Positions 1 through 55,974 of a stretch of 64,000 nt of DNA are shown one piece after another; the first letter of the stretch is position 1; every line of letters begins with the position of its first letter. The stretch is taken from positions 645,635 to 709,634 of the forward strand of contig OZ287697.1 of assembly GCA_965649825.1 (NCBI GenBank), given 5' to 3'. This DNA is from Penicillus capitatus (taxonomy: Eukaryota; Plantae; Chlorophyta). The translations under genes and the position numbers were made by a program. The notes under the pieces were generated by a model that saw nothing but the letters and a program-made list of their open reading frames with translations, had not been told where the DNA came from and did no database searches.

Positions 1-310
1 GTTTTATTCTGGACACCATTTCCGTCGGATCTTCGACCTGCGTGTGATGTGTGGTTTGAAAGATCGGGAAGGAATGATGCAGGTACCGAGATATCCACTG
101 CTTGCTTCTCTTTGGCAACGACATAGACTGTTTCCATCATCTGCATACCGATGCCTTTCTGCTGATAGCCAGGTAGGACGAAGATCTGACCGATGCGATC
201 GCGATGCCTGTCGGGGAGTTGTTTCTTTTGAACCGCGTGTGTCACATGACATTCAAAGCGCCGACAAAACCCGGTAACCTTTGGATCATAAGATGAATGT
301 CTTTTCTGGT
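1..310 (-). CDS. HAT1: HAT1-like (type B) GNAT histone acetyltransferase, runs off the left edge
   Basis: Manual translation gives VTGFCRRF..PDRHRDRIGQIFVLPGYQQKGIG..AVDIS|VEDPTE, matching Hat1 motif A (RISQxLxLPxYQxxGxG) and the VEDP motif, with a GT-AG intron before VEDP. The 5' part is unresolved. Confidence 0.7.
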
Positions 311-4820: not shown

Positions 4821-5910
4821 TTAGGCTTCCTTAAACGCCTTGGATTTCACTGCAACAGCACAGGGATCCTCGTTTGATGAAGTGTGTCATGCAAGAGCAG
4901 ATTTTGTGCTTACGTGTCTTCTTGATGAATTTCCTGTATTTATAGACGTCCATGAAAACAGCAACTCCTTTCGTCTCTGTGCACTCTCCTGTGGCAAAGG
5001 ATGCGATGCCAATCAAAACATCCTTATACTGAAGGACGGTTGGCCGTAAGATCAGCGGACCTCCATCGTCGCCATTGCACAAACCGATGCTTGATTTTTG
5101 TCGCACACAAAGATCGTTCGTTTTCAACGGCGGGTCAATGTCGTATCTGGTATTGCAGTGTGAATTGTTAAAGGTCTGGAAATCGGAAGCTTGGAGAGAG
5201 AAAGAAAAACTGCCACCAACAGACGTGCGGCCGTATCCCATGAAAAACAGATTGTCGCGGTCCTCAGCATCTTTGGCTCCCAATGTCGGTATCGGTGAAG
5301 CACACGTGTCCTTATTGAGTTTGAGAATGATGATGTCATTGCCATCCTCTGTCGATCCCGTCCAATCCGGATGCGGAAAAGCACGAACCGTCTTTCTTTT
5401 CTAACAAAAAACAGACCCCATTCGATCATACGCATCTATCTCTCTGACAAAGAAGGTCACTTGAATCGGCTCATCGCTGTTCACCCCGCCAATGTATAAA
5501 TCGGGAGTGATGGTTGCTTTCTTGCTCGTGCGGGGGTCAACACAATGCGCTGCGGTCAGCACGGCGTCCTTAGCAATCAACACTCCGCCACAAAGATGCT
5601 CTTTCTGTGCCGTCTTGTCACTGTCACACTCCCAGTCACATCGCATATGCTTCCCCGATGCATCCCGCCCACACTTACCGGACGGAAACGATGAACGGAT
5701 GCTGTCCTTGGAAATCACACGTAAAGGTCGGGAAATCAAAGTCCTCAGGTAGCTCTGGTATCTCCGACGTCGGTTGTTTCGGAAGGACTCCTTTCTCTAA
5801 TAAGCAACTTTACACAAGAGCGCCTACTGATGACGAAGCATACGTGCCACAACGGTCGTTATTGAGCAGACCAAAAGCAGAAAGGGTAAGTATTTCTGCG
5901 CGCGAAACAT
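4821..5910 (-). CDS. Secreted trypsin-like (S1) protease homolog, catalytic Ser replaced by Asp
   Basis: Signal peptide, HLCGGVLI..LTAAHC, GNDIIILKL, and CNGDDGGPL where GDSGGP is expected. GT-AG introns are at the same positions as in the neighbouring paralog. Confidence 0.88.
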
Positions 5911-6426: not shown

Positions 6427-7482
6427 CTAGGTCGCATTCTTAAAATCCTTGGATTTCACTAGACACGACACGCAAAGATCACGACACTTTCGTAGCAACA
6501 CAGAGATTTTACGTACTTTCACTCTCGATCCACTTTCTGTATTTGTAGACTTCGGTGAAGACGGAAACGCCTTGTGATTCTGTACAGGACACGGATGAAA
6601 AGGATGCTATACCAATCACCACGTCCTTAAATCTGATGACAGTCGGTCGTCGGATCATCGGACCGCCACTGTCGCCACTGCACAGCCCGGCATCTGTTCT
6701 TCCTCGCGCACAGAGTTCATTCTCGTGCAGAGGTCGGATTATTTCGTATCGACTGTCGCAGAATGTGTTGTTAAAGGTAGTGAAATCCGCTATTTGAAGC
6801 CTGGCGGCGAAGATCGACCCTTCCGATCCGCGACCATAACCCAGAAACGTCAAACCGTCACGATTTGTTGCATCTGGGGCGCCGAGCTGCGGAATCCTCC
6901 AAATGCACGATGGTTTGTTGAGCTTAAGGACGACAATGTCGTTGCCATCTATTTCAGATCCTGTCCAATCTGGATGGGGAAAGGCGCGGACTGTTTGACG
7001 CACCTAATGAAAAGAGTGACCTTGTTCAATATGGTCTCTCACTCAAATAGATCATTACTTGAATCGGGTTATTCCTTTGCTCGCCGCCGATGTATACAAC
7101 GGGAGTTGTTGTTGCTTTCTGATTGGCTCGAGGGTCGACACAGTGCGCTGCCGTCAGTACGGCGTTTTTGGCGATCAACACTCCGCCACAAAGATGCTCT
7201 TTCTTAGCCGTCTTGTCACTGTCACACTTTCAATCACATCATACCGTCAGACGCATGGCACATACCGAACGGAAACGATGTAGGCATACTGCCCTTGAGA
7301 AGTACATGTGAAATCCGTGGTCTCGAAGTCCTCAGATAGCTGTCGAGCACGTCGAGGCAATCTCCCTGTCAAACGCTTCTTGCTCAAACGGTCGTTCGCT
7401 GGAACAAGGCGTTACATGCTGATGTGACGGCCACTGTCAAGACCATAAGCACAAAGAGGAAGCATCCTCGCACGCGGAACAT
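6427..7482 (-). CDS. Secreted trypsin-like (S1) serine protease, intact triad
   Basis: Signal peptide, HLCGGVLI..LTAAHC, GNDIVVLKL, CSGDSGGPM. Tandem paralog of 4821-5910. Confidence 0.92.
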
Positions 7483-37295: not shown

Positions 37296-37845
37296 TCATG
37301 AATCATTCCGCTGACCCAGCGCGGTCAAGGCACCTGCGTTCGTCTGGGCATCCGGTCGGTACACACGAAAAGAGCCATAACCAACTAGGGCATTGTAGCC
37401 GATAGGCATGCATGTGGATAGCTGATTGCCAAGAGAAGCATTACGGACACCGTGCACGACTTGAATGGGATCAATCAGCCTTGGGAGGTGTAGAGTCAGC
37501 GGCTTTAGCCATGAGCCTTTCAGAATCTTCTTTTGTGAGACAGCCGGCGAACACGTGTGCTTCCTCTTTACAGTACTTAAGGGTCATCTGCCGAACGAAC
37601 CCGGTGTCGCAACAAGTTATGAGCAGTATACACTTCCGGACAACGTGCCATGGTACACTCGGAAAAACCGCTGCAATACGAACGTCGTCAGAATAACGCA
37701 CAACGTAAACAGAAGATACATGAAACACGTTGTGTCTCGCGTTCTTGTCGAACAAACACGCCCGACCTAACGCAAACGGTCTTACGGCCGGAGATCGAGC
37801 TGAGTATCGTTATCCCCCACTTCTGTACCGTGATGGTGACGGCGT
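37296..37845 (-). pseudogene. Internally deleted, frameshifted copy of the SDR gene at 42585-43553
   Basis: 37508-37845 aligns closely with 43312-43650. TGCDTGFG has become TCCDTGFV, with a frameshift just upstream. The core (about 42755-43305) is absent, and the remaining 3' part reads DPIQVVHGVRNA..IGYNAL. Confidence 0.9.
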
Positions 37846-37857
37846 GTCTTTGGAAGA

Positions 37858-39015
37858 CAAAGGGTTCGCGACCTCGAGAAACCAGAGTGCGGCCCGTCCT
37901 GCGGACCTGACCGGCGTGAAGCGACGTTTGACCCACTTCTGGCCGACGTCAGACTGTCGTGGACGGAATGGAGCGTTCTGATTGGCCGAGAGCAGTTCGA
38001 ATTGTTCCAGACGTCACCTCGGCTGCAAAACGGATATAAAATGCGCGACGCCGTACCCATTTCCACATTTCCTGTTTTGTCTTACTCTGCGCAGGTTTCC
38101 GAAGCGCATGCTTCAGGTACGGTCCGCCTGCATTATCGACGCTGAGCTGACTCGGCGTCGTAAACGCGCAGTTCTTTTCCGCAGGTGCGCGCCGAAGGAC
38201 AGGCCCCCCGAAGACTCCAACACTCAAAGGTTCGTCCGTTCGCGTTCTCTTGTGTGTCTGCCCACCTAGGTAAGGCCGCGACCACGTGGAATTTCTGCGG
38301 CGTCGACCGATGCCGCGTCGAGCGGCTTCGGCCCCTCGGCCGCGGCTAAAGCGGCGCTCGACGCGGCATCTGTCGATCGACACCGCGTCGAGCGGTCTAT
38401 GCCTCTCGGCCGCGGCTAAAGCGGCGCTCGACGCGGTGGCGATCAACGCCATCTCTCCTCTTACCCAGGTCTCTCGAAACCGGCTCCGGTTTCGAGATGC
38501 ACCTAATTTTTGTCTGCGGTCTATCCGCCAGATGGGCGCCGCGTGGCTGCACAGATCCTGTTCGGCCGCGCGACGCCCATCTGGGTGATACTCCAGGGCA
38601 AAAATCTTCTCTATTGGTTACCGACTTGTCTTTCTTTGCAGCCGATCCTTACAGAGTGCAATAGGTTAGCTACCACATCGCTTCCGGCTGTCTCCTGTAT
38701 AACATTCGCTCGTGGCAGCTGCAATACAGGAATGATCCCGCGAAGATATTCGCATCCTTCAGTGCCACAATCTGTGGACCGTATGAAGGCCGAGAGGCCT
38801 CGTCACCTTGCGGTTGTTCAGTGCTGTAAAGACCTGTCTCCTTCCGTGTGAAGACGACTGAGCAGTGATCCTGCCCAAGAAGAAGAGGTGATGGTCTAGG
38901 ATACTATTCTCTGTTAAGAGGGCAATGACAGGCGTGCCGTCGTTTCCACTTTACACAACTTCTGGCGAAACGGCATGGTTTTTAATCGCTGACAGCTGCA
39001 TCATCTAAGTTCTGT
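37858..39015 (+). repeat. Copy 1 of a 1.16-kb direct repeat rich in hairpins
   Basis: Colinear by eye with 44698-45856 (offset about 6840), with scattered substitutions and 1-nt indels. Confidence 0.95.
38303..38438. repeat. Tandem pair (70-bp period) of GC-rich inverted-repeat units
   Basis: ccgcgtcgagcg..cgctcgacgcgg occurs at 38313 and 38383. Stems are 38303-38324/38355-38376 and 38381-38394/38425-38438. Confidence 0.9.
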
Positions 39016-39953
39016 TCTGAGATTGCAACAATAAGAGAACAGCTTGTTTCAAGTGTTTTGTGAATAACTTCTGATAACAAACAAGAAACGATGATCGATA
39101 AATGCGATAAGTCGTTGTCGCATTGTGTGTTTGCGCGGTTTGGACAAAGAGTAAAGAGCGCGATGTGATGGAAAGTGCCGTCTTGTTTGGAAAACGTGAG
39201 GGTAAGCTCTACTCTGCAAGATTGCGAAATGTACGTGTATCGCAGAATATCCTTAACGTGGTAGAGGAGCAAGTACAACAAAACCTGTTGGACTGCCGTT
39301 GATAAAATTCCAAAAAAGAAAGACGACTATCCGCAATGTTTCAGCAGATAGTAGCCACCGTCAAAGAGTCTAACAACAAACCGACGGAAATGACAATGCC
39401 GTGAGCAGTAATAACATCTATTCTAGAAATTCACTCGCCGCCTCACGTTCAACGGTCGCTGTGGCGTTTGCAAAGCTCTATGGCAACTTCCTAATCAAGT
39501 GGCGTAAAGTCCGTACTAACTTCTTAATGGCAATACAAAGTGCCAAGTGCATTGCGGCCTTGTCAACTTCCAACTGAAGTTCTTAACGGCACGTGAAGTA
39601 TCAAGTGAAGTTCCTACCGAGTTCCTAGCGCCACTTCCATTTATGAATATTTGAACGGTCCCAATTCTTGTATGGACACATTGGCTTTAAACATCTATTG
39701 CGACGCATGTTACACCGAGTGTCCATTTGGCGACGTAATGGGGACCGTCATTCTAGCCTTTCACAGTCGGAACATACAAAAAATAGTAGAGTTTTGGGAT
39801 TATGTTTAGGACAACAGATACATGTTTTGTCACAACGGGATTGGTTTTTAAAGGGATTTTGTGTTTTCAAGACCGCTCGTTTAAGTACGGAGAGTGTTAT
39901 ATTACGTATTTGCCTGTAGAAGAGCAACCCTCACTGGCTTAGGTATTTCTAGC

Positions 39954-40826
39954 TACGTGTTGAATGGAAAACTGGGCCAGCTGAGAAAGGGACAGATCGA
40001 ATTCATGAAAAGCCTGCCATCCGGAGACTACATGATCCAGGTTGATTAGAACGATCTTGAATAGCTAAGAAAAAAACACTTCCCAGAAGCAGACTTTGAG
40101 ATTTGCGGAACATGGATACCAAAACCATCACATTTTGAAATAAGCATACCATCCGTTATGATTGAGGGGCAGATTAGTCGCTGACTTATCACGGAATCAT
40201 ACATGAAGTTAAGTTAAACGCAAAGATGTCTATTTACCCCGGACAAGAGACGGGAAAGCCTCTCTCACGTTTGTACGATTCCACCGAAAATCGAATCTTA
40301 GCAAAACTTAGGCCAATCGAGAATTGTCATGCCCTCACCGATTAAACGAGGATATCCTCCACCGACAAGGAATGTTCATTGGCACACTTCCAGTGTACGC
40401 ATGACGATTTGTTCATTACCACGCAATCCGAAACGCAACCCTCTGCCGCCACCCATCCATTTACGAAATCTTAGTTAAAAAGGAACTGAACCCCAAGACT
40501 GTTAAGGTATTAATCGAGATGTGCAAGGAGAAGAATGAGAAACGGAAACTGACGAACTCCACTTAGAGCACTCACTGGCAGCGTCAAAGTTTAGACGTGT
40601 GTATGAAAGAATTTCTTTGCTGAAAAGTTACTCCATCGAAACGCGGCCATACAGAAACTCCGACGATCCGACCGCGGAATCACAACGAGACCTTGTACAA
40701 CATGATGATTTGCGGTCACTTGCACGAGGGAAAGACGCTTTTTCCAAATTAGAAGAACAAACGTCACAGGACAGATTGTGGCTTCAAGAACCTGAAAGGA
40801 GACTGGAGAAAACACAACCATGTTAA
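39954..40826 (+). pseudogene. Decayed intronless reading frame of unknown origin
   Basis: Protein-like frame YVLNGKLGQLRKGQIEFMKSLPSGDYMIQVD*NDLE*LRKKHFPEADFEI is interrupted by TAG, TAG and TGA, then continues after frameshifts (EDILHRQGMFIGTLPVY, ELNPKTVKVLIEMC). Confidence 0.4.
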
Positions 40827-42584
40827 AACCAGGAACGCATGTTCGCGCTGTGTCGTGTTAACGAAGGTATAGAACCGCTGCTTTTTCCGTTATTGAATTA
40901 ACAAACAGCGTGAGGAATCACTTCATAATCTTACCGAGTCTTAAATCTAGTGAGCCATGCAAAAGCTAGTTCGGATGACATCACAAGTCGGTAAACAAAG
41001 AATATAATGTTAAGAGGCAGAGTCATACTCTATCAAGTAGAATTGCCCCGGTGGTTTTGGCATTTAGTTTCGTAAAATCGCATCGTCAAAAACAATTATC
41101 TGTACTACGTGTCTCCATTGTTAACAAGTTTCTGAAGGTATCGACTCTTGATCTTTTGAATTTGTTGACCATTTTATTACATGAAGTCTCTTATCAAAAA
41201 GCTTTCGAAAAACAAATCATTGGTTTTATCGACTAACGACATTTGCTTGGAAGGACTGATCGCTTCTGCGTAAACTGCAATGGCCGTCTTTACGAGATGC
41301 ATGTGCTCTTTCGGAGGTTTAGACAAAGTCCAATTTCCTCTGTGGATTTTGCGCCGAGTGCATCCACGGGCAATTATCGTTACAACTCATCGATTGTTGG
41401 CGGCTTCAAATTTATGGAACACTTCTGATGGATGAGATGGCTGTTTATTCCAAAGACTGGCTAGCTAGAATACCGATGATCGTCTAAGTTAGAGATCGAC
41501 ATGTTTTCGTTGTATTCGATCAGTTTTCCTTTATGGAGTGAAACGTGTAATTTCCAAATAGTCTTATGGAAAGAAAGCCTTGTGTAGTCATTTCGTAAAG
41601 GCTACAATGTTTGCGTATTTTGATAGAAAACAGAGCTGTTTGCACGCGACAAACACGGACAAAGGTAAGAGTGTATTCTGATCTAATTGTAATTGGATAT
41701 ACAAGGTGTTTTCTTGGTTAATATAACTCGAAAGGATTGCGTTGGATGGTTAATACAAGCAACTGCGGTACGTTCGACAAGTCTAGGGTAATATTCAAAC
41801 GTCGTGAAGCCCATCAGATTGTTCGCGATGACGCAATCGTCAAGCAATGACGATTTCTTTTATGACACTAGGACGACTCTGGGAGTTCGCAGAACACATA
41901 ACCAAGCCAAGTTCTGATTGGTTGGATGCATTGTGTTTTTGTGCAGTGCGAAACAACACTGCACTTTCTGTTGGTGACCTTTGCATGTTCAATTGCCGAT
42001 TACACCGGAGACTCGACTTTTGCAGAACAAACCGTTGGTTCCCTTCTCTCATCGACTCACAGTTTCTATTGTAGGTTACGACAGGCGAGCTGTTACCAAC
42101 TTTCGGTATCTGTAACGACACAAGACGGATGAATTTTCTACCTTTCCTGCGTCTGAAGGGTCCTCCCTCCAGTTTTCATCGTATCCACAAAGAGCGACGA
42201 TCTTCATACCCAGTTGAAAAGTTGAGATCACTCATTCTTCACCGCAGAGGCATGTGGATAGCAGCTTCATCAGAACGAAGTTTTCTGGTGGGGATTACTC
42301 ACGCAAAGGGGAACAACCGTGGAACGATGTTTCAGGACACGTCTCGAAGGTATTCTTTTCTGGGGACTGGGATGGAACTACGCCATGATATTATTAATTC
42401 TACAGCACGATACATGCAAACCCCTCATCTTCGACAGCGACACAATTAGATGTGAGAGGCTGTGCACTTGTCACCACAACAATTCCCGGATGCAGGTGCA
42501 GAGAATACATAGACATCGATGGAAACAGAACTAACTGTCAGTGACTATGTGTCATAGGGGCACCACTGTTACAGAAAATTAAAT

Positions 42585-43553
42585 TCATTGACTTATTCTG
42601 TTCAACACATCCACAAAAGATTCCGGTAAGAGAGAAAGATGCCAATAAAGCCACAAGGCGTCATAACCGATAAGAATGCGCGTGGCTGGATAACGGCAAA
42701 GAAGAGCATCACGAACACCGTGGACGACTCGAATGGGATCACCAGCCATGCGCCTATACTCCTTCGCTTTTTCTTCGTACGCAAAAGGATCTCTAGGGTA
42801 ACGTTTGCGGACATCGGATGTCGCTCTGTCGCATCTCTCTTTGACTGTTGGTCGACGCTCTTCGGAGTCCAAGATGGGTGTGTTGAAGAATCCAGGAATA
42901 ATCTTAATAACACGGATACCCGAGAAGGCTAATTCGCGCCTCAGACAAGTGAAGAATGCGTCCTGTGCGCTTTTGGAAGCAGAATAGGCGGAGAACATTG
43001 GAGCCGGTATGAGAGATGAGCAGCTCGTGATAGCAACGATTCTGCCTCCGGGCTGATCCATCAAGGGGAGGAACTTCTTGGTCACGCGCACGGACCCAAG
43101 GAAATTGATGTCCATCACTCTTTCGTACTCCGACATCTTCGTCATCTCGACATAAAACCCCGCAAAGATACCAGCGTTGTTGATGACGGCGTAGAGGCTC
43201 TTCTGTTCCTTCTCTAAGAACGTCTTGACGACGTTATAGGCGGCCTGGATCTGCGTTTCGTTAGTGACGTCCAGAGGGAGCGTCGTCACTCGTCCCTTTC
43301 CAGTGGCCTCGGCCATGAGCCTCTCAGAACCTTCTTTTGTGAGACAGCCGGCGAACACATGTGCTCCCTCTTCACAGTACCTGAGGGCCATCAGCCGACC
43401 GAACCCGGTGTCGCATCCAGTTATCAGCAGTGTCCTTCCGGACAACGTGCCATGGTACTTTCGGAGACACCGCTGCAATACGAACGTCGTCAGAATAACG
43501 CACAACGTAAACAGAAGATACATGAAACACGTTGTGTATCGCGTTCTTGTCAA
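42585..43553 (-). CDS. Intronless short-chain dehydrogenase/reductase, SDR9C (retinol/hydroxysteroid dehydrogenase)-like
   Basis: N-terminal TM segment, LLITGCDTGFG, LDVT, VINNAG, INFLG, YSASK, IIPGFF in one uninterrupted 322-codon ORF. Confidence 0.93.
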   Translation of the reverse strand: MTRTRYTTCFMYLLFTLCVILTTFVLQRCLRKYHGTLSGRTLLITGCDTGFGRLMALRYCEEGAHVFAGCLTKEGSERLMAEATGKGRVTTLPLDVTNETQIQAAYNVVKTFLEKEQKSLYAVINNAGIFAGFYVEMTKMSEYERVMDINFLGSVRVTKKFLPLMDQPGGRIVAITSCSSLIPAPMFSAYSASKSAQDAFFTCLRRELAFSGIRVIKIIPGFFNTPILDSEERRPTVKERCDRATSDVRKRYPRDPFAYEEKAKEYRRMAGDPIRVVHGVRDALLCRYPATRILIGYDALWLYWHLSLLPESFVDVLNRISQ

Positions 43554-44697
43554 ACAAACACACCCGCCCTAACGCGAACGATCTTACGGCCAGAGATCGA
43601 GATAAGTATCGTTATCCCACTTCTGTACCGTTGATGGTGACGTTGTGTTCAGAACAACAACCGCCAACCACACAGTTCCAGCCTCAAATGAAGAGATGTG
43701 GAAATTTCTTGTTACACCGGAGATGGACGAGGCAACATCAACCAGGTCTTTCATCTTGGCCTTCACCTTTATCGAGTCTGCTAAGAAAGACTGCTGCAAC
43801 TGTCAGATGTAAATGGATGGATACGTGTTAACTGTCAAGTAACTATTTCCTTCCAGAATTGACATAGTCCAGGAAGACAGCAGAATTGTGACGAAAACAA
43901 ATGTTCCTCTCTACACGCACGACAAATACGAAATACTATGCTGGTTGCTTTGGATCCAGTCTGCCCAGGATGAGAGCAAGGATCACTGCCAGCACCATTT
44001 TCATAAAGCATACGTCGTTTCCCATTCAGGCTCCCACCTCCCGTCTCCTTCGTATGCGTTGTCATTAAGATGGCGACCACTCTATTCACTAGATCTACAA
44101 GCCTTGAATTCCTTTTTCGAATGACCAAGTAGTCATTCACGACGGTGACGGCGCAGAGACTGTTGACAATCCTCCTGACGTTGGCCTAGGGCCCTCCTTT
44201 AAGCTGCAATGCTGTCTGTGTAAATTGCATGTAGCAGAAAAGAAGGGGGAATCGTTTGTAATTAGCAAAGCTGTTGGATAGGGAGTCGGATCCTTTTACT
44301 CGGTTTCCCGTCGCAGAAAATCTTGGTTTGTTGTTTCTTTCTCAGGAAACATTTTGCGGGTCCGTCGTGATCGGAAAATCTCCATTGGATCCTTATCTAC
44401 CTTCTCGCATTGAATGCAATCTGTTTGGCGTCCACGTCCAGTCCATGCTTCGCTGTGCAACATAAGGCAAAAAACCAGTTCAGGATGGATCTCTGTCGAG
44501 GTGTGCAGTTCGGGATTGTGTCCTTCGTTTCCTTGACTCGTCTTCGATCTGCGGAAAACCGCCGAATTCGCGAGCGCGTTTCATCTCGAGGCGCGTCAGC
44601 TGGTCGTCAACCTTCCACGGGGTCGATGAAAGGACGGTAAGACGCACGTTCGCTATCGCCATTATGCGGCAAGCTCTGCCTATATCACCCTGAAAGG

Positions 44698-45856
44698 CAA
44701 AGGGTTCACAACCTCGAGAAAACAGAGTGCGGCACGTCCTGCGGACCTGACCTGCGTGAAGCGACGTTTGACCCGCTTCTGGCCGACGTCAGACTGTCGT
44801 GGAGGGAATGGAGCGTTCTGATTGGCAGAGAGCGGAGTCGAATTGTTCCAGACGTCACCTCGGCTGCAAAACGGATATAAAATGCGCGACGCCGTACCCA
44901 TTTCCGCATTTCCTGTTTTGTTTTACTCTGCGCAGGTTTCCGAAGCGCATGCTTCAGGTACGGTCCGCCTGCATTATCGACGCTGAGCTGACTCGGCGTC
45001 GTAAACGCGCAGTTCTTTTCCGCAGGTGCGCGCCGAAGGACAGGTCCCCCGAAGACTCCAACACTCAAAGGTTCGTCCGTTCGCGTTCTCCTGTGTGTCT
45101 GCCCACCTAGGTACGGCCTCGACCACGTGGAATTTCTGCGGCGTCGACCGATGCCGCGTCGAGCGGTTTCGGCCCCTCGGCCGCGGCTAAAGCGGCGCTC
45201 GACGCGACGTCGGTCGATCGACACCGCGTCGAGCGGTCTATGCCCCTCGGCCGCGGCTAAAGCGGCGCTCGACGCGGTGGCGATCAAACGCCATCTCTCC
45301 TCTTACCCAGGTCTCTCGAAACCGGAGCCGGTTTCGAGATGCACCTAATTTTTGTCTGCGGTCTATCCGCCAGATGGGCGCCGCGCGGCTGCACAGATCC
45401 TGTTCGGCCGCGCGACGCCCATCTGGGTGATACTCCGGGACAAAAATCTTCTCTATTGGTTACCGACTTGTCTTTCTTTGCAGCCGATCCTTACAGAGTG
45501 CAATAGGTTCGCTACCACATCGCTTCCGCTGTCTCCTGTATAACATTCGCTCGTGTCAGCTGCAATACACGAACGATCCCGCGAAGATATTCGCATCCTT
45601 CAGTGCCACAATCTGTGGACCGTATGAAGGCCGAGAGGCCTCGTCACCTTGCGGTTGTTCAGTGCTGTAAAGACATGTCTCCTTCCGTGTGAAGGCGACT
45701 GAGCAGTGGTCCTGCCAAAAAACAAGAGGTGACGGTCCAGGACAGTGTTCTCTGTTAAGAGGGCAATGACAGGCGTGCCGTCGTTTCCACTTTACACAAC
45801 TTCTGGCGAAACGGCATGGTTTTCCATCGCTGACAGCTGCATCATCTAAGTTCTGT
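44698..45856 (+). repeat. Copy 2 of the 1.16-kb hairpin-rich direct repeat
   Basis: Colinear with 37858-39015. All hairpins are retained. Confidence 0.95.
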
Positions 45857-46320
45857 CCCCGAGAGTGCACGACGGAGATTCGATCGTCCAGACAATCGGA
45901 CGACCTCCACTCGGCTATCAGACAGACTGCGTTTGTACAATGCCCAGATCGGGGCCTACAGGGTGCCTGGCTGCACTGTCAACATACATTCTCTCCCATG
46001 AAACGATACTCCGCTCATAATCTCACGAGACCTGATCGCAGACCGCCTTGAAAGCTACCAGAGTGGCGGTGCTTTCCCGTTTTGCTGTTGCACTCTATCG
46101 TCTCTTTGGTAGCACCGATCTGAAACCGAGAGGGATGAGAATCGGGTAGAGCATCCGACAGCTGTTCGAGAGACGCGTACCGACATGTTCTGTACGCTGT
46201 GTCACCTTCCAAAAGCTCTTTTACAAATTTTGTCATTCTTGCACAGATGGGTCCATCCATTTCTATCAACGTCGTCGCCGCCGCTCTCCGCAGCGTTGTC
46301 TGAGCGATCGTTGTGGTACA

Positions 46321-47231
46321 ATGGGTGCGTAGCTCTTCCTTTAGGGCATCGCGTGTAGCTGCTTTATGGCCCATTTTCGTTCTAGGCATCACACGCGGGA
46401 CACTGCACAAACGCAAAGCGACGGGAGGCCGCAAGAAAGCGTGGAGAAAGAAAAAGAAGTAACGCTGATTCGGCATCCTTCCTTCGAACTGCCAGATCGC
46501 TGCCTCCAGATACGACATGGGACGACCTTCCGCCAGCACGAAGCTCTCCTCCAACGTCGAGGTGCGCCGCGTTCGAGCACGCGGAAGACTGATCAAACGC
46601 AGAGCCCTTCGCCTCGACTCCGGCTGCTTTGCCTGGCCCTCGGAGGTCACATCATCTCACATCCTCACATCTCCCTTCCATCGGTCGACCCGTGCAGGCA
46701 TGCACCAGGAAGACACGCATCATGGATGTTGTCTATCATCCCAACAGTAATGAACTGGTGAGCGCGGGCAGATCAAGAAGGGCGAAAACCGTGAGCGGCA
46801 GGTGCGGACGAAATCTCTGACGAAGTCTGTGGTGGTCCAAGTGGATGCCAATCCCTTCAAACAGTGGTACCAAAAGCATTACGGCGTGGAAGTTGGCGTG
46901 AAGGGCAAAGACGATGGGACGTCCGAAAACCTGCCAAACTTTGAAAGCATGAAAGACGTGCCGATGCTCCACATCCGTCCACGAGGACGCGAACTCTGTC
47001 GTTTGCTAGGTTTCGGAAGAGCAGATCAAAGAGATGAAAAGCCATCTGGCAGCGAGGAGGGCACTGGATGCGCGAGTGGCCGAGCAAATGATCACCGGTC
47101 GCTTGATGGCAATCGTCGCATCGCGCCCTGGTCAGATAGGAAGAGCGGATGGATACGTCCTGGAAGGCAAAGAGCTCGAGTTCTACATCAAGAAGTCCGC
47201 CAAGAAGAAGGGAAAGGCAGCAGCCGAATGA
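46321..47231 (+). CDS. RPS8: 40S ribosomal protein S8 (eS8), divergent, 5 introns
   Basis: ATG G|..[67 protein letters not shown]. Confidence 0.93.
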
Positions 47232-47290
47232 CAGAAACGCTGTACGATGCTTCTGTTTAAAACGGAGGCGCCTCCACGGCCCACTGCCCC

Positions 47291-48430
47291 TCAGAACGCT
47301 CGGAATGCGTTCTCCGCTTCTTCAGCGTCCAACGGCTCTCCCGTTTCCGACGTGGATTCCTTGTAGCTGTCGAAGTAGCTTGTGTCGTTGGCCGTCTTGA
47401 TCTTCGGAACAATCGGAGCACGCATCGTCCCTGCACCCCATCGACCTCTGTCCACACTGTCCTCCCCTGACGTATCCCTCACCGTTGGCAAGCGCGTTCC
47501 AGTCGAAGCCCTTGAAGAATCGGTGCTTCTTGATGTCGTCCACGCCGTTGTACAGGTTTCCGATGCGTTTGCTCTGATCTCCGTTGAGCAGCTTTCTTAT
47601 CAAGTCCTGAAGACACCCGTCGTCGACGTGTGCCCACGTCTGTGATGTCTGTGTGCCTTGGCCCACGGATCCATCGCTTTTGGATAGACGACGCGGCCGT
47701 CGAGGATCTGTTGGTAGACCACAAAAGGATTGTCGTCGCTGAAAGGAGGATAGCCCTCGAGCAGCTCGTAGAAGAGCACACCGAGACTCCAGAAATCCAC
47801 AGCGACGCCATGACCGCGACTCTGAATCACTTCCGGCGCCAAGTACTCGGGAGTCCCGCACAGCGTCCACGTTCTACGGGGAATAATGCGAGGATCTTCG
47901 ACAGCATCGCCACAGCGTGTGACACACCTCTCGCTCACTTTCTTCGCAAACCCGAAATCTGTCAGCTTAGCATAGCCGTTCTTGTCCAGCATTACGTTTT
48001 CAGGTTTGAGATCTCAATAGGCCACGTTGTGTGCGTGCAGTTCTTCCAGGATCAACGTCAGGCAGGCGATGTAGAAACGCACGATCGCCACCGAAAAGCG
48101 TCCAGCGCGTTGCAAATGAAAAAAGAGCTCGCCGCCAGGCACATACTCGAGAACCATGTAGATATGCGACCTGTCCTGGAACGCTCCAGCCCTGCACACA
48201 TGTTGCGTCGCCGCTGAGAATGCGAATGGGAGACAGACAGATTGGCAATGCGTGGATGCTGGATGTCCTGCAGAACAGCCCTTTCGCTGAGGATATGCTC
48301 CACTTGTTTGCGCTTGAGCAGAAGCGATTTCTTCATGATTTTCAAGGCAAAGAATTGCCCATCGCGTTTGTCTCTCACAAGCCGGACACGCACACAAGAA
48401 TCTATGAATAGAGCAACTGCTTTTACACTA
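47291..48430 (-). pseudogene. PKA/PRKX-like kinase with an in-frame TGA in the YRD motif and no intact Gly-loop
   Basis: FALK, EYVPGGELF, AY*DLKPEN (TGA at 48014-48016), [36 protein letters not shown]. Confidence 0.85.
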
Positions 48431-50924: not shown

Positions 50925-53900
50925 ATGTTGGCCGTCTACGTCAAACGACCGTGTTGTGTAGATGGTGGTCGTTGCGTACTCTCTGATGCGGAGATCGAAG
51001 ATGTCTTCAACGAAGAGAAAACGACGTGGATGATCACAGACAGACTCTACCAACAGCACGGAATTCAGGAGATCCTCGACTGCGCGGCAGACAACGACGT
51101 CATTTCGCTGAACCTAACAAAGACCGTCGCCCCTACCGAGAGAATCGTCGTTCGCCGCAACGTAACGATCGACGGAACGCCGCCGTCTGATGCGAATCCC
51201 TCAAGGGCACAAACAAAATTTACGTGTCCATCGGGCAAGGGACTTTTTCTCGTAAGGTACGCATAGCATCTCACACATTTTTGTTGTCGTACAATTTTTT
51301 CTCACACTTTCCAGAGACTGTGACTTTGCATTGAAGAATGTTGTCATCCAAAACTGCAAGCACGCTAAGACGGATGGCGTTGCCAGCATCATCGAAACCG
51401 CCAGGTGCTCGCACAAGTCTTCTCAGGAACGCGAACTGCGTCTATTCAATGTGACATTCAAACGGAATGAGAATCTTGGAGGCTCAGTGGGACTCGTCGT
51501 GCACGATCCTGCGTGTCATGTCCGTCTTTTCATGCGCGACGTTCTTTTTCACGGCAATGGATATCGACGTGCATCGCGTCTAGCGAGAGAGAATATTCTT
51601 GAGAACGTGGTCGTGAAAGAAAATGAAGGCCCCAAAATCAGAAACCGAAATCGTCCTTTCTTTTTCTTCCCTCGGAAATTCATTGCAAATCTGACAGATC
51701 TCGTCGTGGCGGACAACCGAAGGACGGCTTTTGTTACGGCGTACGACGGACAGTTAGAGATCGCGGATTCTAAGTTCATCGGCAATTCGGGGAACAACAT
51801 CGGCGTCGTTTTCGCCTTTTCGACTCGACTGACCGTAAAGAACTCTCAGTTCATCCGCAATGACTGTCAAGGCAGTGGGGCTGCCATTCTAGTATACAAA
51901 GGCTCTACAGCCGCTTTTTCCTTTTGTGAGTTTTTGGAGAATAATTCGACGGAGATCGGAGGCAGTGTGTACATTAAGCAAGTGCGAAGCGTTTTGTTCG
52001 AATCTTGCCGTTTTGTGCGAAACACTGCTGCTCATGATGTTGACACCGATGAATTTGTTCCTCTTGGCCAAGGGGGAGCCGTCTTCTATCAGGGCCACTT
52101 CTACCGAATAGACAGATTCGATGTATACACGAGCAAGATAGTGTTCAAGAAGTGTGATTTCATTCAGAATCGAGCTTATGGAGGGAGTGCTGTTTATTTT
52201 ATACACGTCGGCGGAAAAATTCTGTTTCGTTCGTGTATTATTCGCGAGAATGAAGAGCTCTTTCATCATAAAGTGCTATATAAGGATGTCGGTGGGGTAG
52301 TTCAAGTTTTTGCGAGCCGTATCTCAACCTTTCGAATGAGGCAGTCTGTCGTCGAGCGGAACAGCGGAGTCCGGGGAGGCGGTGTGTCCATCATCGGCGC
52401 ACCGGGCAAACTGTATTTTGAGAAGACTATTTTCCGCAAGAATCGTGCACTGCGTGAAGCTGGAGGAGGGGTATTCGTCAGGGCGATCATAAATCACGAT
52501 GAACCAACATCCTTGAAGATTCGTCAGTCTGTCTTCCGAGAAAATGAAGGAAGTACACTGGGAGGTTCTGTTTACGCCTCGGGAAAGCGCATAGAGGCGG
52601 AACTCTACAACTGTACCTTTGCAAACAATTCAGCAGTGAAGGGGGCGGCCGTGCTTGCAGATGCTGTCGACGCACTGGTTATCACAGATTGTATCTTTAG
52701 AGGTAATGGCGCCGCGATCAGTGGCGGCGCCATTGCGGCCGAGGCTGTGGTCACTAAGGTGTTCGAGAGTACTTTTATCGAGAACAAGAGTCAGTATGGT
52801 GGTGCCATTGCTGCGTTTTCCGGCCTTCTGATTTCCAGATCTGCCTTCCGCGGAAATGAAGCAGGCGCTAGTGGGGGAGCTTTGCATGTCAACTATCGGT
52901 ACTACGATCCCATCGACGAAGTGGGCAGTTACAGTTATATTGGACTCTTTAAGAGTACATTCGTCAACAATCGTGCAGATGGTTCTGGAGGCGCTGTCCA
53001 CAACATCATGAACGTCGATTTGAAGACAGGAGACTGTATATTCAAGCGAAACAGAGCAAGCGTTGGTGGAGGTCTGTCGATTCTGCATGGACCGAAAAGA
53101 CAGTGGAAGCATGTCGTCAAACGCAGTAAGTTTTTTGAGAATCGCGCTCTGATCGGAGGTAAGAAAGAAGAGAATACGGTGTATTGGTGATGGAGTGTTG
53201 TTCGTAGGCGCCATCTCGTTGATCGATGCCTCGGCCTATTCCTTCCCTCCTGACCGTGAGCCGTACATTGGTCGTTACAATTTTCGGTATGACGCGAAGC
53301 GCAATTTCAGCTTGACGCACACAGAAGGCGGTTTTCGATTTCGAAAAAGTGTGATTGAGAGGAATACAGCCGAACGCTCCGGTGGAGGCATCTACTGCGA
53401 AGACATCACACTTTTGAAGATCGACGATCAGCCCATGAAACATTTTAGGCAACAAAATGTCGAGTGCCCAAACACTGTCGCCATTCCGTCCGTCGATATG
53501 GAGAACATTCGAAACAATACGGTGCGAAAGAGCGCGAGCGAGAGTCACGAAGAAAATCTGTCAACTATATCGAGCAGCTTCTGCGTGACAGTTCTCGAGA
53601 ATGATCAGCCCATTGCGTCGATTCGTCACGGAGGCGTGTATCGCATTGAGCAGTGGAAAAGTGGAGAGATCTTTCCCGTTCTCCGCGTAACGATGCATGA
53701 CAGTTTGGGAAACAACTTTTCTCAGACGAAGCCACCACAGCCGCTGACAGGATCACAAATCAGTGAGCCGCAGAACGCCTACGGAAATGTTGCAAGCGCC
53801 ATGCTGCGATCAAAACGTGATGCGTCCTTTCCGCACAGCTTTCTGACGAATGATGTTTCGGCAGACCTGTCCTCAGGCGTCGCCGTGATAGAGCCTGGTC

Positions 53901-55974
53901 ATCGATATGCCAAACCTGGTCACTATCAGCTAACACTCAGCGTTGAGGGATTTCCGTCATCGGAGGTCATCATCCAGATCGACGTCCGTCGCTGCACCAT
54001 CAATGAACAGGCAGATGTCGATGCAGCCGTCTGCACACAGTGCGATTCGAATCAGTACAATTTCGATGCTGGCAACGATCGGAGCAAGTGCATTCGATGT
54101 CCCGAGCACGGTAACTGCTCGACGGTCTTCACTCTCCCGCAGGCAGGATACTGGAACTCTTTTCCTTGCTCGCATCACATGGATCGTTGTCTGAATGAAG
54201 ATGCTTGCACAACAGTGAATGAGAGTTTTCTGGAGGGACTTCTGAAAAACGAAACATCTTGTGCGTTTGATGACGCGACCAGGGTGGAGTACCAGTCCAG
54301 TCACTGTGCAGAAAACTATGAGGATGTCCTCTGTGGATCTTGCAAGAACACTAGTGGACGGTTGGGTGCATTTGTGTGTGCTGCATGCATTCCTAAAGAA
54401 CTGGCAGCGATGGGACTGATTGGGATGATCATCTTACAACTGTGTCTTGCCCTCTTGCAAATCAAGGAGACACTGGATTCCGACGAAACAAATTCCGATC
54501 AAGACGCTCTCTCCTTGAGAGTCATCGCCAGCAGCAGAAGATCTGTTCGTTCTGTCGCACAGTACGAATCACTAGAGCATGGTCTGGAAGTGGACAGAGC
54601 TTCCATCGCTGCAAGGAGTATCCAAACGACCTCCTCGCGCAGAGCCACAGACATCAGAAACGCAAGATGGCGATTTCTGCAGACTTTAAAGGTATGCTTG
54701 TTATGAATGCGTGCTTTTCATAGAGAGCTCACTGCAGATCACTATCAACCTGTTGCAGACAGTGGTAGCTGCTGCATCGCTCGATGTGTCATGGACTCGT
54801 CCCTCTCTTGATCTGTTCAAATCTTTCGGTGAGTATCAGCAGATGGATCTACATCTCTTATGAGTTCCTCTCTCTGACAGATAGCATCGGAGGATCTTTT
54901 GCCATCACATCTTCGTTCTCCCTGGATTGCCTGTTACCGACAGGGACAGCAGCTCCGAGAACGATCATCCGGCAGATCCTTATTGCGCTGCTGCCTGTGC
55001 TGATCAGCCTAGCGATCTGTGTCTCCTGGTCATTGCTCGAGATCAAGAGCGAGAGAATAGCTGGACGGTTGGCAAGAAGGATCATCCTGGTGCACATTGT
55101 TGTTGCTTACAACTTCTATCTCCTGCTTTTCAAGGTCGCTGTCGATGCTTACAACTGTATCTCTGTCCATGACAGCAGCAACCTCGATGACATCCAGTCC
55201 ATCGATCGCTACTGGGCACTGGACACGTCAATACGATGCTACACAAGCAGCCATCTGCTTTTCATTCGGACAGTTTCGATTCCTTTGCTGCTCTTTGGCG
55301 TCAGTTATCCAGTGCTGCTGGCTGTGTTCCTCGTCAACAGCCGCAAAAATGGCACCCTGTCCTCCACGTGGACACAGGAGACAATGGGCTTCTTGTTTGC
55401 GGGTTTCGAAGAGAGGTTCGTTCACTGGGACTGTTTGATTCTTCTACGAAAGGCAGTGATCTCGGTTATCGTTGTCTTTGCTTATCAACTGGGTCGGGAC
55501 TTGCAAGGTCTTCTTGCCATGGCTGTCCTTGTCCTTGCACTTTTCTTCCAGGCGCGTTTTGCCCCCTTTAAACACGAACTTGGAAATCTGAATGCCTTGG
55601 AATCAGCGTCGCTCCTTGTGAGCTTCTTCACTTTCTTTTGCGGTCTCCTTTTTGGCAATGAGAAACTGAAGGGTGTTTTTCTCAGAGGAATACTCACTGT
55701 CCTCGTTGTCGGTAGCAATATTGGATTGTTTGTTGTTCTCTTTTTTCTTTTGGCTAAACTGAAATTCCGGCAGATTAAACTCAAGCTTGACGAGAATCAG
55801 GTCCACTGCGGTCAGGGGAGACCACATGAAGTCATTCTTGCTTTTGCCAAGTATCAGTTCACTAGCTTCTGCATGCTGATGTGTAAATGGTGGCAAGTTG
55901 ACGACCGAGAGACGACGACCCAACCAACTGTTGAACTCTCGCGTGCTGATAAAAACTCAGTCCATAAAAACTGA
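50925..55974 (+). CDS. Large membrane protein: pectin-lyase-like beta-helix (FxxN/GGA repeats), Cys-rich region, multi-TM C-terminus; 4 introns
   Basis: Repeated FxxNxA..GGA(I/V/L), CTQC..NQYNF..CIRCPEHGNC and CAENYEDVLCGSC, then about 7 hydrophobic segments. Exons join in frame through GT-AG introns. Confidence 0.85.

What the first reader, a model, noticed from the sequence alone, without database searches (positions are those of the whole stretch)
38138..38584. Array of five conserved hairpins: candidate structured ncRNA or small-RNA precursor cluster
Within about 450 bp there is a 9-bp stem (38138-38159), a 22-bp stem with one mismatch (38303-38376), a 14-bp stem (38381-38438), a perfect 12-bp stem (38472-38497) and a 20-bp stem with one to two imperfect pairs (38528-38584). 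All persist in copy 2, where the 22-bp stem carries a different single mismatch plus a G-U pair. The 70-75 nt foldbacks are pre-miRNA sized, and chlorophyte miRNAs are known to arise from intronic hairpins. A DNA-level role (cruciform, origin, MITE relics) is the alternative. This is the least explained structure in the window.
Basis: partly seen in the sequence, partly recalled or inferred. Interest (0 to 1): 0.8.

Follow-up and report, generated by a model that had tools for sequence, protein, structure and literature searches.

The report
Palindromic hairpin cluster upstream of RPS8
Five strong hairpin-forming inverted repeats really do sit together in a duplicated non-coding module of a green-alga genome, but the evidence says mainly that DNA-level copying errors and gene conversion made and maintain them, and whether they also yield small RNAs cannot be decided from sequence.

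Summary
Each folds far better than shuffled sequence (z -3.9 to -7.6). They are the only long inverted repeats in about 105 kb of this genome.

They lie in a 1.18-kb non-coding module, X (37851-39027; copy 2 at 44691-45869). X has a conserved promoter-like core: TATA, CCAAT and two GACGTCA boxes. A sister genome from the same ENA sample carries both copies plus a third, 5 in all. That third copy lies upstream of a second RPS8 gene.

- **No RNA-specific signal:** folding is equally good on both strands, and none of 94 stem pairs shows a compensatory change. There is no Rfam family, no snoRNA box layout and no conserved ORF.
- **DNA-level signals:** one loop is inverted exactly (CT to AG), which is a template-switch signature. 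The copies are conversion mosaics, and the hairpin tract is the GC-richest 300 nt of the window.
- **Stems versus loops:** stems vary less than loops and flanks (6/168, 15/138, 64/321 variable columns).

My best reading is a young, lineage-specific fold-back locus made and kept by DNA-level processes. If it is transcribed, it would give Dicer-type hairpin RNAs. Small-RNA function remains untested. Interest is modest.

The parts
37851..39027 (+). Module X, copy 1 (X1): 1.18-kb non-coding repeat that holds the five hairpins
   Evidence: 95.6% identical to 44691-45869. No ORF of 35 aa or more is intact in all four copies then aligned (W_X1, W_X2, L2_X1, L2_X2), apart from ORFs that lie inside the invariant hairpins.
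37900..38065 (+). Promoter-like core: GACGTCA 37945-37951 and 38010-38016, CCAAT box (GATTGG, minus sense) 37980-37985, TATAAAAT 38035-38042, then a pyrimidine-rich tract 38057-38089
   Evidence: Read from the sequence. Nearly invariant in all 5 copies, except that TATA is changed to TATGAAAT in L2_X2. Promoter function is inferred, not shown.
38137..38160 (.). Hairpin 1: 10-bp stem (one G-U), loop CUGA
   Evidence: -17.2 kcal/mol, z -5.3 (+ strand); -13.4, z -3.9 (- strand). 1 variable column of 24 in 5 copies.
38303..38376 (.). Hairpin 2: first copy of the 70-nt palindromic unit, 22-nt arms, 30 nt between them
   Evidence: D4; I4; -55.7 kcal/mol, z -4.9
38372..38447 (.). Hairpin 3: second copy of the 70-nt unit, 20-23-nt arms with one A.G mismatch
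   Evidence: D4; I6; -48.0 kcal/mol, z -4.9
38472..38497 (.). Hairpin 4: perfect 12-nt arms. The central CT is replaced by its reverse complement AG in copy 2 (45326-45327).
   Evidence: I19, I20; z -5.0. Followed by CCTAATTTTT at 38502-38511.
38522..38590 (.). Hairpin 5: 33-nt arms, 82% complementary, 3 nt between them. Outer pairs extend it to about 38505-38605.
   Evidence: I2; -60 kcal/mol, z -7.1
38117..38718 (+). Candidate introns of a non-coding transcript: 38117-38184 (68 nt, holds h1), 38270-38468 (199 nt, holds h2+h3), 38519-38641 (123 nt, holds h5), 38665-38718 (54 nt). Alternatively one long intron 38230-38641.
   Evidence: The GT and AG dinucleotides are kept in all 5 copies. Inference only; there is no RNA evidence.
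44691..45869 (+). Module X, copy 2 (X2), with hairpins at 44978-45001, 45144-45217, 45213-45289, 45314-45339 and 45359-45437
   Evidence: I1, I3, I8, I20
46321..47231 (+). RPS8 gene, about 450 bp downstream of X2: 6 exons, introns of 61, 51, 52, 44 and 52 nt
   Evidence: A third X copy precedes a second RPS8 copy in L045.
37386..37721 (-). Truncated short-chain dehydrogenase pseudogene left of X1. It marks X1 as part of a partial tandem duplication of the SDR-X unit.
   Evidence: tblastn of the intact SDR (42588-43523, - strand) gives fragments at 37721-37635, 37626-37501 and 37472-37386. blastn.

Best explanation
The five hairpins are GC-rich imperfect DNA palindromes; one of them is a 70-nt unit duplicated in tandem. 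They sit in the non-coding body of a 1.2-kb low-copy module, X. X carries its own TATA/CCAAT/2xGACGTCA promoter-like core and lies upstream of RPS8.

Most likely the palindromes were created, and are kept nearly perfect, by DNA-level processes. These are replication template switching between arms, conversion between the two tandem units, and gene conversion among the paralogous X copies.

On this reading they are a young, lineage-specific fold-back locus. They are not a conserved structured RNA or an established miRNA cluster. If X is transcribed, as its promoter suggests, the RNA must fold into 20-33 bp duplexes. The likeliest consequence is then removal within short introns and/or dicing into hairpin-siRNA or proto-miRNA-like small RNAs, as happens to transcribed foldbacks in Chlamydomonas.

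Shown here: existence, statistical excess, copy structure, conversion mosaics, loop inversion, absence of coding capacity, absence of covariation.
Inferred: transcription, splicing, dicing.
For: 1. The palindromes are real and exceptional. z is -8 for the tract and -3.9 to -7.6 per hairpin. They are the only long inverted repeats in about 105 kb.
2. Folding is equal on both strands: -252.5 against -254.7 kcal/mol. Single-sided stem changes give G-U on the + strand in some cases and on the - strand in others. This is what DNA palindromes predict.
3. The two central bases of h4 are CT in four copies and AG, the exact reverse complement, in W_X2. Loop inversion is a documented outcome of template-switch mutation, which also creates perfect hairpins in one step (PMC10710096).
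4. The loop of h3 in L2_X2 has become that of h2, which indicates unit-to-unit conversion. Type-B copies differ from type A by clustered changes that create local direct repeats.
5. The copies are conversion mosaics. Paralogues within the window are closer to each other than alleles are in three of five X segments. Allelic divergence inside X is 2.6-13.5%, against 0.6% just outside X and 1.85% over the whole 20.6-kb locus.
6. The hairpin tract is the GC-richest 300 nt of the window, 66% against 49.5%. This fits GC-biased conversion.
7. Stems vary least: 6/168 variable columns, against 15/138 in loops and linkers and 64/321 in flanks. Arm-to-arm correction would produce this.
8. X is non-coding. 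No ORF is intact in all copies, and a hypothetical spliced 69-aa ORF is broken in both L2 copies.
9. No Rfam family, no tRNA and no snoRNA box layout were found.
10. Dispersed copies were not detected. ORF-based searches of billions of predicted proteins found only X copies on one contig. A 24-mer of the 70-nt unit (h2/h3) gave no hit in JGI metagenome or viral contigs.
Against: - Four unrelated palindromes packed into 450 bp, directly downstream of a conserved promoter and nowhere else nearby, is not what a neutral mutational process obviously predicts.
- Lower variability in stems than in loops is also what selection for pairing would give.
- The hairpin tract differs by 4.6% or less in every pair of the four copies compared, while adjacent parts reach 11-16%. 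X3 is near-identical to W_X1 in this tract. This could be constraint rather than conversion.
- The comparison rests on five copies from two closely related genomes, so selection and conversion cannot be separated.
- No expression data exist.
Confidence: 0.45

Rival explanations
1. A functional small-RNA precursor cluster. X is a non-coding Pol II gene whose introns and exons hold several independent hairpins. A Dicer-like enzyme processes them into regulatory miRNA-like RNAs, partly in a mirtron-like way.
For: - The promoter core is conserved in all 5 copies, and the GT/AG boundaries are conserved.
- 20-33 bp near-perfect duplexes in 70-100-nt foldbacks match the duplex length Dicer needs.
- Stems are less variable than loops.
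- In Chlamydomonas, 11 of 18 high-confidence miRNAs come from introns or UTRs, and the rest from non-coding RNAs (PMC4817775).
- Template switching is a known route to new miRNA genes (PMC10710096).
- Each candidate intron minus its hairpin is 44-54 nt, like the real RPS8 introns of 44-61 nt. This is inference.
Against: - There is no strand bias in stability or in wobble pairs.
- No compensatory change was seen.
- No complementary site exists in 64 kb.
- No lower stem lies below the 22-bp duplexes of h2 and h3.
- TATA is mutated in L2_X2.
- Whether this alga has Dicer or Argonaute is unknown.
- No homologue exists outside this organism.
Confidence: 0.22
2. A cis-acting element of RPS8. The hairpins, as DNA or as upstream RNA, would regulate the ribosomal-protein gene downstream. 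Possible modes are an enhancer or insulator, an RNase III-type fail-safe terminator that shields the RPS8 promoter, or an autoregulatory structure.
For: - Two independent RPS8 copies each have an X module at the same distance upstream: window X2 and L045 X3.
- The X promoter is conserved.
- Inverted-repeat expansion at promoters can change expression in yeast (PMC13100816).
Against: - The X-RPS8 linkage is explained by block duplication (4 kb at 95.2%), so it is not independent evidence.
- X1 has the same hairpins with no RPS8 downstream; only AT-rich non-coding DNA follows it.
- RPS8 has its own proximal pyrimidine-rich start region and a 5' acceptor at 46293.
- The palindromes, with 22-66 nt of paired sequence each, are far longer than transcription-factor sites.
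Confidence: 0.1
3. Relics of mobile or imported DNA: MITE or foldback elements, Helitron ends, or short palindromic repeats transferred from organelle DNA.
For: - h4 is followed, 9 nt later, by CTAA-T, which resembles a Helitron 3' end.
- Chlorophyte organelles spread short palindromic repeats, and inert copies of them occur in the Volvox nucleus (PMC2670323).
- The GC content is foreign to the surroundings.
Against: - No target-site duplications are present; the flanks of h5 are part of the palindrome itself.
- Dispersed copies were not detected in the window, in the other loci, or by ORF-based searches of the same assembly.
- The Volvox-type repeats have 3-5-nt TAAA/TTTA loops, unlike h2 and h3, which have 30 nt between arms.
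- The Helitron-like end has about a 4% chance of occurring at random (my estimate).
Confidence: 0.1
4. A conserved structured non-coding RNA, such as a snoRNA, snRNA-like RNA or telomerase-type RNA, transcribed from the TATA promoter.
For: A TATA box with upstream conserved boxes and a T5 run after h4 (38507-38511) superficially recalls snRNA-type genes.
Against: - No Rfam match reaches its threshold. The best hits are generic miRNA-hairpin models at 27 bits against gathering scores of about 80.
- There is no C box on either strand and no H box between hairpins on the + strand.
- The stems lack internal pockets.
- T4 runs at 38075 and 38175 would stop Pol III early.
- I saw no telomere-template motif on reading the sequence.
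- There is no covariation.
Confidence: 0.05

Closest known systems
Intron-, UTR- and ncRNA-derived hairpin precursors of miRNAs and siRNAs in Chlamydomonas reinhardtii (DCL3 substrates; PMC4817775), and animal mirtrons
   Same: - Green-algal setting.
- Foldbacks with duplexes of about 21 bp or more.
- Position in candidate short introns of a Pol II-type unit.
- Lineage-specific, with no conservation outside the organism.
   Different: - No small-RNA reads, no Dicer dependence and no target are shown.
- The host transcript is itself non-coding and hypothetical.
- Several unrelated hairpins are clustered.
- The stems are equally good on both strands.
Hairpins created and remodelled by replication template-switch mutations (PMC10710096), and inverted-repeat expansion at yeast promoters (PMC13100816)
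   Same: - Near-perfect inverted repeats.
- An exact loop inversion between copies (h4).
- Clustered multi-base differences that raise local repeat identity.
- Location next to a promoter.
   Different: The ancestral, pre-palindrome state is not available, so no individual creating event can be reconstructed here. Only the loop inversion is directly visible.
Short palindromic repeats of chlorophyte organelle genomes and their inert nuclear copies (Volvox carteri; PMC2670323)
   Same: - Green alga.
- 50-80-nt hairpin-forming repeats in non-coding DNA.
- Mismatches accumulating in the stems.
   Different: - These are GC-rich, and h2/h3 have 30 nt between arms.
- They are not dispersed.
- No organelle sequence was available to compare.
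- The loops lack the TAAA/TTTA signature.
MITEs and foldback transposons
   Same: Terminal inverted repeats of about 20 nt around a short internal segment, with hairpin potential.
   Different: No target-site duplication and no detected dispersed family. The copies exist only as part of larger segmental duplications.

Membership tests
miRNA / hairpin-siRNA precursor | Foldback with a duplex of about 21 bp or more and few mismatches | tested here: met
   h2 has 22 nt at 95%, h3 20-23 nt at 91-95%, h5 33 nt at 82%. h1 (10 bp) and h4 (12 bp) are too short.
miRNA / hairpin-siRNA precursor | Transcription of the hairpin strand | not testable with these tools
   Only promoter-like motifs and GT/AG sites are seen. 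No RNA data exist for this organism in the collections searched.
miRNA / hairpin-siRNA precursor | Discrete 20-22-nt miRNA/miRNA* reads with 2-nt 3' overhangs, dependent on Dicer | not testable with these tools
   No small-RNA data. Whether the genome has Dicer or Argonaute was not determined.
miRNA / hairpin-siRNA precursor | A complementary target | tested here: inconclusive
   No site with 3 or fewer mismatches to any 21-mer of the arms occurs in the 64-kb window outside X. The 4-mismatch hits are at chance level. The rest of the genome was not available.
Conserved structured RNA (any Rfam family) | Score at or above a family's gathering threshold | tested here: not met
   0 matches at gathering thresholds. 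The best sub-threshold hits score 27 bits against thresholds of 79-83.
Conserved structured RNA (any Rfam family) | Compensatory base-pair changes among homologues | tested here: inconclusive
   0 of 94 pairs changed on both sides and 83 pairs are invariant. The five copies are too similar to test this.
Box C/D or H/ACA snoRNA | C (RUGAUGA) and D (CUGA) boxes, or a hairpin-ANANNA-hairpin-ACA layout with pseudouridylation pockets | tested here: not met
   No C box on either strand. No ANANNA between hairpins on the + strand. The stems are continuous and lack pockets.
MITE / foldback transposon | Target-site duplication flanking the terminal inverted repeats | tested here: not met
   The flanks of h2-h3 (GGCGT...ACGCC) and of h5 (TATC...GATA) are inverted, not direct, repeats.
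MITE / foldback transposon | Many dispersed copies in the genome | tested here: inconclusive
   None in 105 kb. ORF-based searches found only the X copies on one contig. A direct whole-genome DNA scan was not possible.
LTR pair of a retrotransposon | Two direct repeats flanking gag-pol or other internal element sequence, with no homology outside the repeats | tested here: not met
   Homology continues to the left of X1 into a dehydrogenase pseudogene (37386-37847 matching 42664-43648). The interval holds a host SDR gene and no long ORF.
Organelle-derived palindromic repeat (NUMT/NUPT) | Sequence identity to the organism's mitochondrial or plastid DNA | not testable with these tools
   No organelle genome of this alga was available. 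ORF-based searches of the same assembly gave no organelle-like hits.

The most novel reading that the evidence does not exclude
X is a template-switch-born, polycistronic hairpin-RNA gene of a green alga with ultra-short introns. Each hairpin would occupy its own mirtron-like intron, and folding would bring the intron back to the genome's length of about 50 nt. The hairpins would be diced into regulatory small RNAs, and the gene would have been co-duplicated with RPS8.
Probability: 0.12. Interest if true: 0.6.

Novelty: new member of a known kind. Interest (0 to 1): 0.3.

Why it matters
If the hairpins are only DNA palindromes, the locus is a clean natural example of three linked processes. 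Template switching and gene conversion create and preserve perfect inverted repeats, they raise the local GC content, and they accompany segmental duplication in a compact algal genome. It also explains why an assembler broke a contig there.

If the hairpins are diced, the locus would be a very young small-RNA gene caught close to its birth in an unstudied chlorophyte. It would then bear on how miRNA-like genes arise, and on how genomes with 50-nt introns tolerate long insertions. Either way the question can be settled with one RNA-seq library and one small-RNA library.

Tried and rejected
- **Known RNA families:** Rfam at gathering thresholds over the whole window, and Rfam at E up to 10 over 37700-39200, gave no family. 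ARAGORN found no tRNA.
- **Exact pattern scans with a unit 24-mer:** 0 hits in JGI metagenomes and 0 in viral contigs.
- **Arm-gap-arm pattern in 185,579 prokaryote genomes:** 4 hits. All are bacterial or archaeal hairpins with unrelated loops, and two are orthologous Rhizobiales loci. I judge them chance matches.
- **RPS8-based search for related loci in metagenomes:** only distant relatives. Most matched at 56% or less over nearly the whole protein; two reached 62-65% in their best segment. Many were cDNA-like contigs, and the four longest showed no comparable hairpins.
- **Translated-ORF trick to find DNA homologues:** this gave the second genome (L002) and the third copy (L045), but nothing outside this organism.
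- **Coding hypotheses:** no ORF is conserved. A spliced 69-aa ORF that is intact in the window copies is broken in both L2 copies.
- **LTR-pair hypothesis:** rejected, because homology extends beyond X1 and the interior holds a host gene.
- **snoRNA and Pol III readings:** rejected on box and T-run scans.
- **Helitron 3' end after h4:** only a 4-base resemblance, and not pursued.
- **Heuristic ORF-joining intron finder:** meant to calibrate splice signals, but too noisy to use. Intron sizes were taken from the RPS8 model instead.
- **Purifying selection on the hairpin tract:** this could not be separated from a gene-conversion tract.

Full report
**What is there**

The tract 38120-38600 contains five inverted repeats.
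- h1 (38137-38160) is a 10-bp stem.
- h2 (38303-38376) has 22-nt arms at 95% complementarity.
- h3 (38372-38447) has 20-23-nt arms.
- h4 (38472-38497) has perfect 12-nt arms.
- h5 (38522-38590) has 33-nt arms at 82%. Outer pairs extend it to about 100 nt.

h2 and h3 are two tandem copies of one 70-nt palindromic unit. The loop of that unit holds smaller palindromes such as GCCGCGGC.

The tract folds far better than dinucleotide shuffles, with z = -8.0 on the + strand and -8.8 on the - strand. Each hairpin on its own gives z between -3.9 and -7.6, and no shuffle did as well. No inverted repeat of similar quality occurs elsewhere in the 64-kb window, or in 41 kb of two further loci of the same organism.

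**Setting**

The window is nuclear DNA of a green alga. An ATAD3 exon has its closest named relatives in Helicosporidium, Chlamydomonas euryale, Picochlorum and Haematococcus. Genes are dense and introns are tiny: the RPS8 model at 46321-47231 has introns of 61, 51, 52, 44 and 52 nt.

The hairpins lie in a 1.18-kb module that I call X. X1 is 37851-39027 and X2 is 44691-45869, and the two are 95.6% identical.
- Left of X1 is a truncated short-chain-dehydrogenase pseudogene. The intact gene (42588-43523, minus strand) lies left of X2, separated from it by an extra 1042 bp. X1 is therefore part of a partial tandem duplication of an SDR-X unit and not an LTR.
- Right of X1 are 3.5 kb of AT-rich DNA with no convincing ORF.
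- Right of X2, about 450 bp away, is RPS8.

**More copies**

Translating ORFs that run through the palindromes and searching predicted proteins recovered a second genome from ENA sample ERZ25074695.
- Locus L002 lies on a 1.46-Mb contig at 41x coverage. It is colinear with window 27784-48361 at 98.15% identity and has both X copies.
- A 6-kb contig at 12x coverage is identical to the window. It ends at 38652 inside X1 and 26 nt inside X2, so the assembler broke at the repeat.
- An exhaustive phmmer search found a third copy, X3, about 40 kb away on the same 1.46-Mb contig. It lies in a 4-kb block (L045 9575-13617) that is 95.2% identical to window 44379-48391. That block contains a second RPS8 and part of a kinase gene.

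All five hairpins are intact in all five copies. Nothing similar was found outside this organism. The scans covered a 24-mer of the 70-nt unit against JGI metagenomes and viral contigs, an arm pattern against prokaryote genomes (4 chance hairpins with other loops), and three protein-space searches.

**Is X a gene?**

A 165-nt core is almost invariant in all copies. It holds GACGTCA at 37945 and at 38010, GATTGG at 37980, and TATAAAAT at 38035, followed by a pyrimidine-rich tract. Downstream, GT and AG dinucleotides that could bound short introns are kept in all copies.

No reading frame is conserved. No ORF of 35 aa or more is intact in all copies, apart from frames inside the invariant palindromes. 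A hypothetical spliced 69-aa ORF is open in the window copies but has stops or frameshifts in both L2 copies. If X is transcribed, it is non-coding.

The candidate introns are 38117-38184, 38270-38468 and 38519-38641. After subtracting the enclosed hairpins they are 44, 47 and 54 nt long, which matches real introns here. I find this suggestive, but it is inference without RNA data.

**RNA or DNA?**

There is no RNA-specific signal.
- Stability is the same on both strands.
- In the five-copy alignment, 92.8% of pair cells are paired, against 25-44% when partners are slid. However, 83 of 94 pairs never vary and none shows a compensatory change, so covariation says nothing either way.
- The six variable stem positions are single-sided. 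They give G-U on the + strand in two cases, G-U on the - strand in two cases, and plain mismatches otherwise.
- Rfam gives only generic hairpin hits at about 27 bits against thresholds near 80. There is no C box and no H/ACA layout.
- No 21-mer of the arms has a near-complementary site elsewhere in the window.

Several observations point to DNA-level dynamics.
- The two central bases of h4 are CT in four copies and AG, their reverse complement, in W_X2. Loop inversion is a described outcome of replication template switching, the same process that can create a perfect hairpin in one event (PMC10710096).
- The h3 loop of L2_X2 has been replaced by the h2 version.
- Type-B copies (L2_X2 and X3) differ from type-A copies by clustered changes that create local direct repeats: TTGTCGACGC twice and CGAAGACT twice.
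- The copies are mosaics. Paralogues within the window are closer to each other than to their alleles in several segments. Allelic divergence inside X reaches 13.5%, against 0.6% just outside X and 1.85% over the whole 20.6-kb locus. W_X2 carries a type-A 5' part while its downstream part is closest to X3.
- The hairpin tract is the GC-richest 300 nt of the window, 66% against 49.5%. GC-biased conversion would produce this.

**Conservation**

Variable columns make up 6 of 168 in stems, 15 of 138 in loops and linkers, and 64 of 321 in the flanks of the tract (Fisher p = 0.02 and 1e-7). The hairpin tract differs by 4.6% or less in every pair of the four copies compared, while neighbouring segments reach 11-16%. 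In the third copy, X3, it is near-identical to W_X1.

This pattern fits selection for pairing. It fits equally well with a conversion tract of about 500 nt combined with arm-to-arm correction. In the RPS8-linked copies, the non-hairpin DNA downstream of the tract is no more diverged than the hairpins. Five copies from two near-identical genomes cannot separate these explanations.

**Verdict**

I judge the most likely account (0.45) to be a young, lineage-specific cluster of DNA palindromes, produced and maintained by template switching and gene conversion inside a low-copy segmental repeat. If the module is transcribed, fold-back RNA, and possibly hairpin siRNAs, would follow as a consequence.

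The rivals, with my probabilities, are:
It stays open because of the promoter, the intron-like context and the precedent in Chlamydomonas (PMC4817775);
- a cis-regulatory role for RPS8 (0.10);
- a transposon or organelle relic (0.10);
- a conserved structured RNA (0.05).

The unexplained point is why four unrelated palindromes cluster behind one promoter. One RNA-seq library, one small-RNA library and a whole-assembly scan would settle the matter.

Noticed in passing
window 37386-39027 and 42588-45869; L045 9575-13617; window 1-215 against L045 16806-17020: The neighbourhood is a nest of segmental duplications. There is a partial SDR-X tandem copy and a 4-kb X-RPS8-kinase block repeated about 40 kb away at 95.2%. 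The first 215 nt of the window (inside an acetyltransferase/HAT1-like gene) match L045 in reverse at 96.7%. The palindromes may contribute to this instability.
   Followed up: partly
L001 and L002 (ENA ERZ25074695): The same metagenome assembly holds two versions of this alga. Contigs at 12x coverage are identical to the window. A 1.46-Mb contig at 41x coverage is 98.15% identical over 20.6 kb. These could be two strains or two haplotypes. The 12x contig breaks exactly at the X repeats.
   Followed up: partly
window 46246-46324: Upstream of RPS8 exon 2 there are two possible ATGG|GT mini-exons, at 46246-46249 and 46321-46324. Either could supply Met-Gly. An acceptor (ctctccgcag) at 46293 implies a 5'-UTR intron. 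The real first exon is not established.
   Followed up: no
window 39060-42585: A 3.5-kb AT-richer stretch (42.7% GC against 49.5%) has no ORF of note and lies between X1 and the 3' end of the SDR gene. Its origin is unknown; it could be an insertion or decayed duplicated DNA.
   Followed up: partly
window 43649-44690: A 1042-bp segment is present between the SDR promoter region and X2 but absent from the X1 copy. Its last 310 nt are shared, at about 80%, with the X3 locus. No protein-family search was run on its ORFs.
   Followed up: no
window 4920-5754 and 6523-7341: Two tandem trypsin-like serine-protease gene copies lie on the minus strand, 67% identical at the DNA level.
   Followed up: no
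window 51331-55974: Long ORFs encode a protein rich in Pmp-type (chlamydial polymorphic membrane protein-like) repeats. A Cys-rich region and a multi-pass membrane region follow. This is unusual-looking for a green alga. The identification is by eye only.
   Followed up: no
window 46073-46110 and 38057-38089: The pyrimidine-rich tract after the X TATA box (TTTCCTGTTTTGTCTTACTCT) resembles a tract upstream of RPS8 (TTTCCCGTTTTGCTGTTGCACTCT). It may be a shared initiator-type motif.
   Followed up: no
L047 3155-3211 and L048 1572-1628: Two Rhizobiales MAGs share an intergenic hairpin whose 13-nt arms (CCGCGTCGAGCGG) happen to equal those of h2 and h3, but the loop is different. I judge this a coincidence.
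   Followed up: yes
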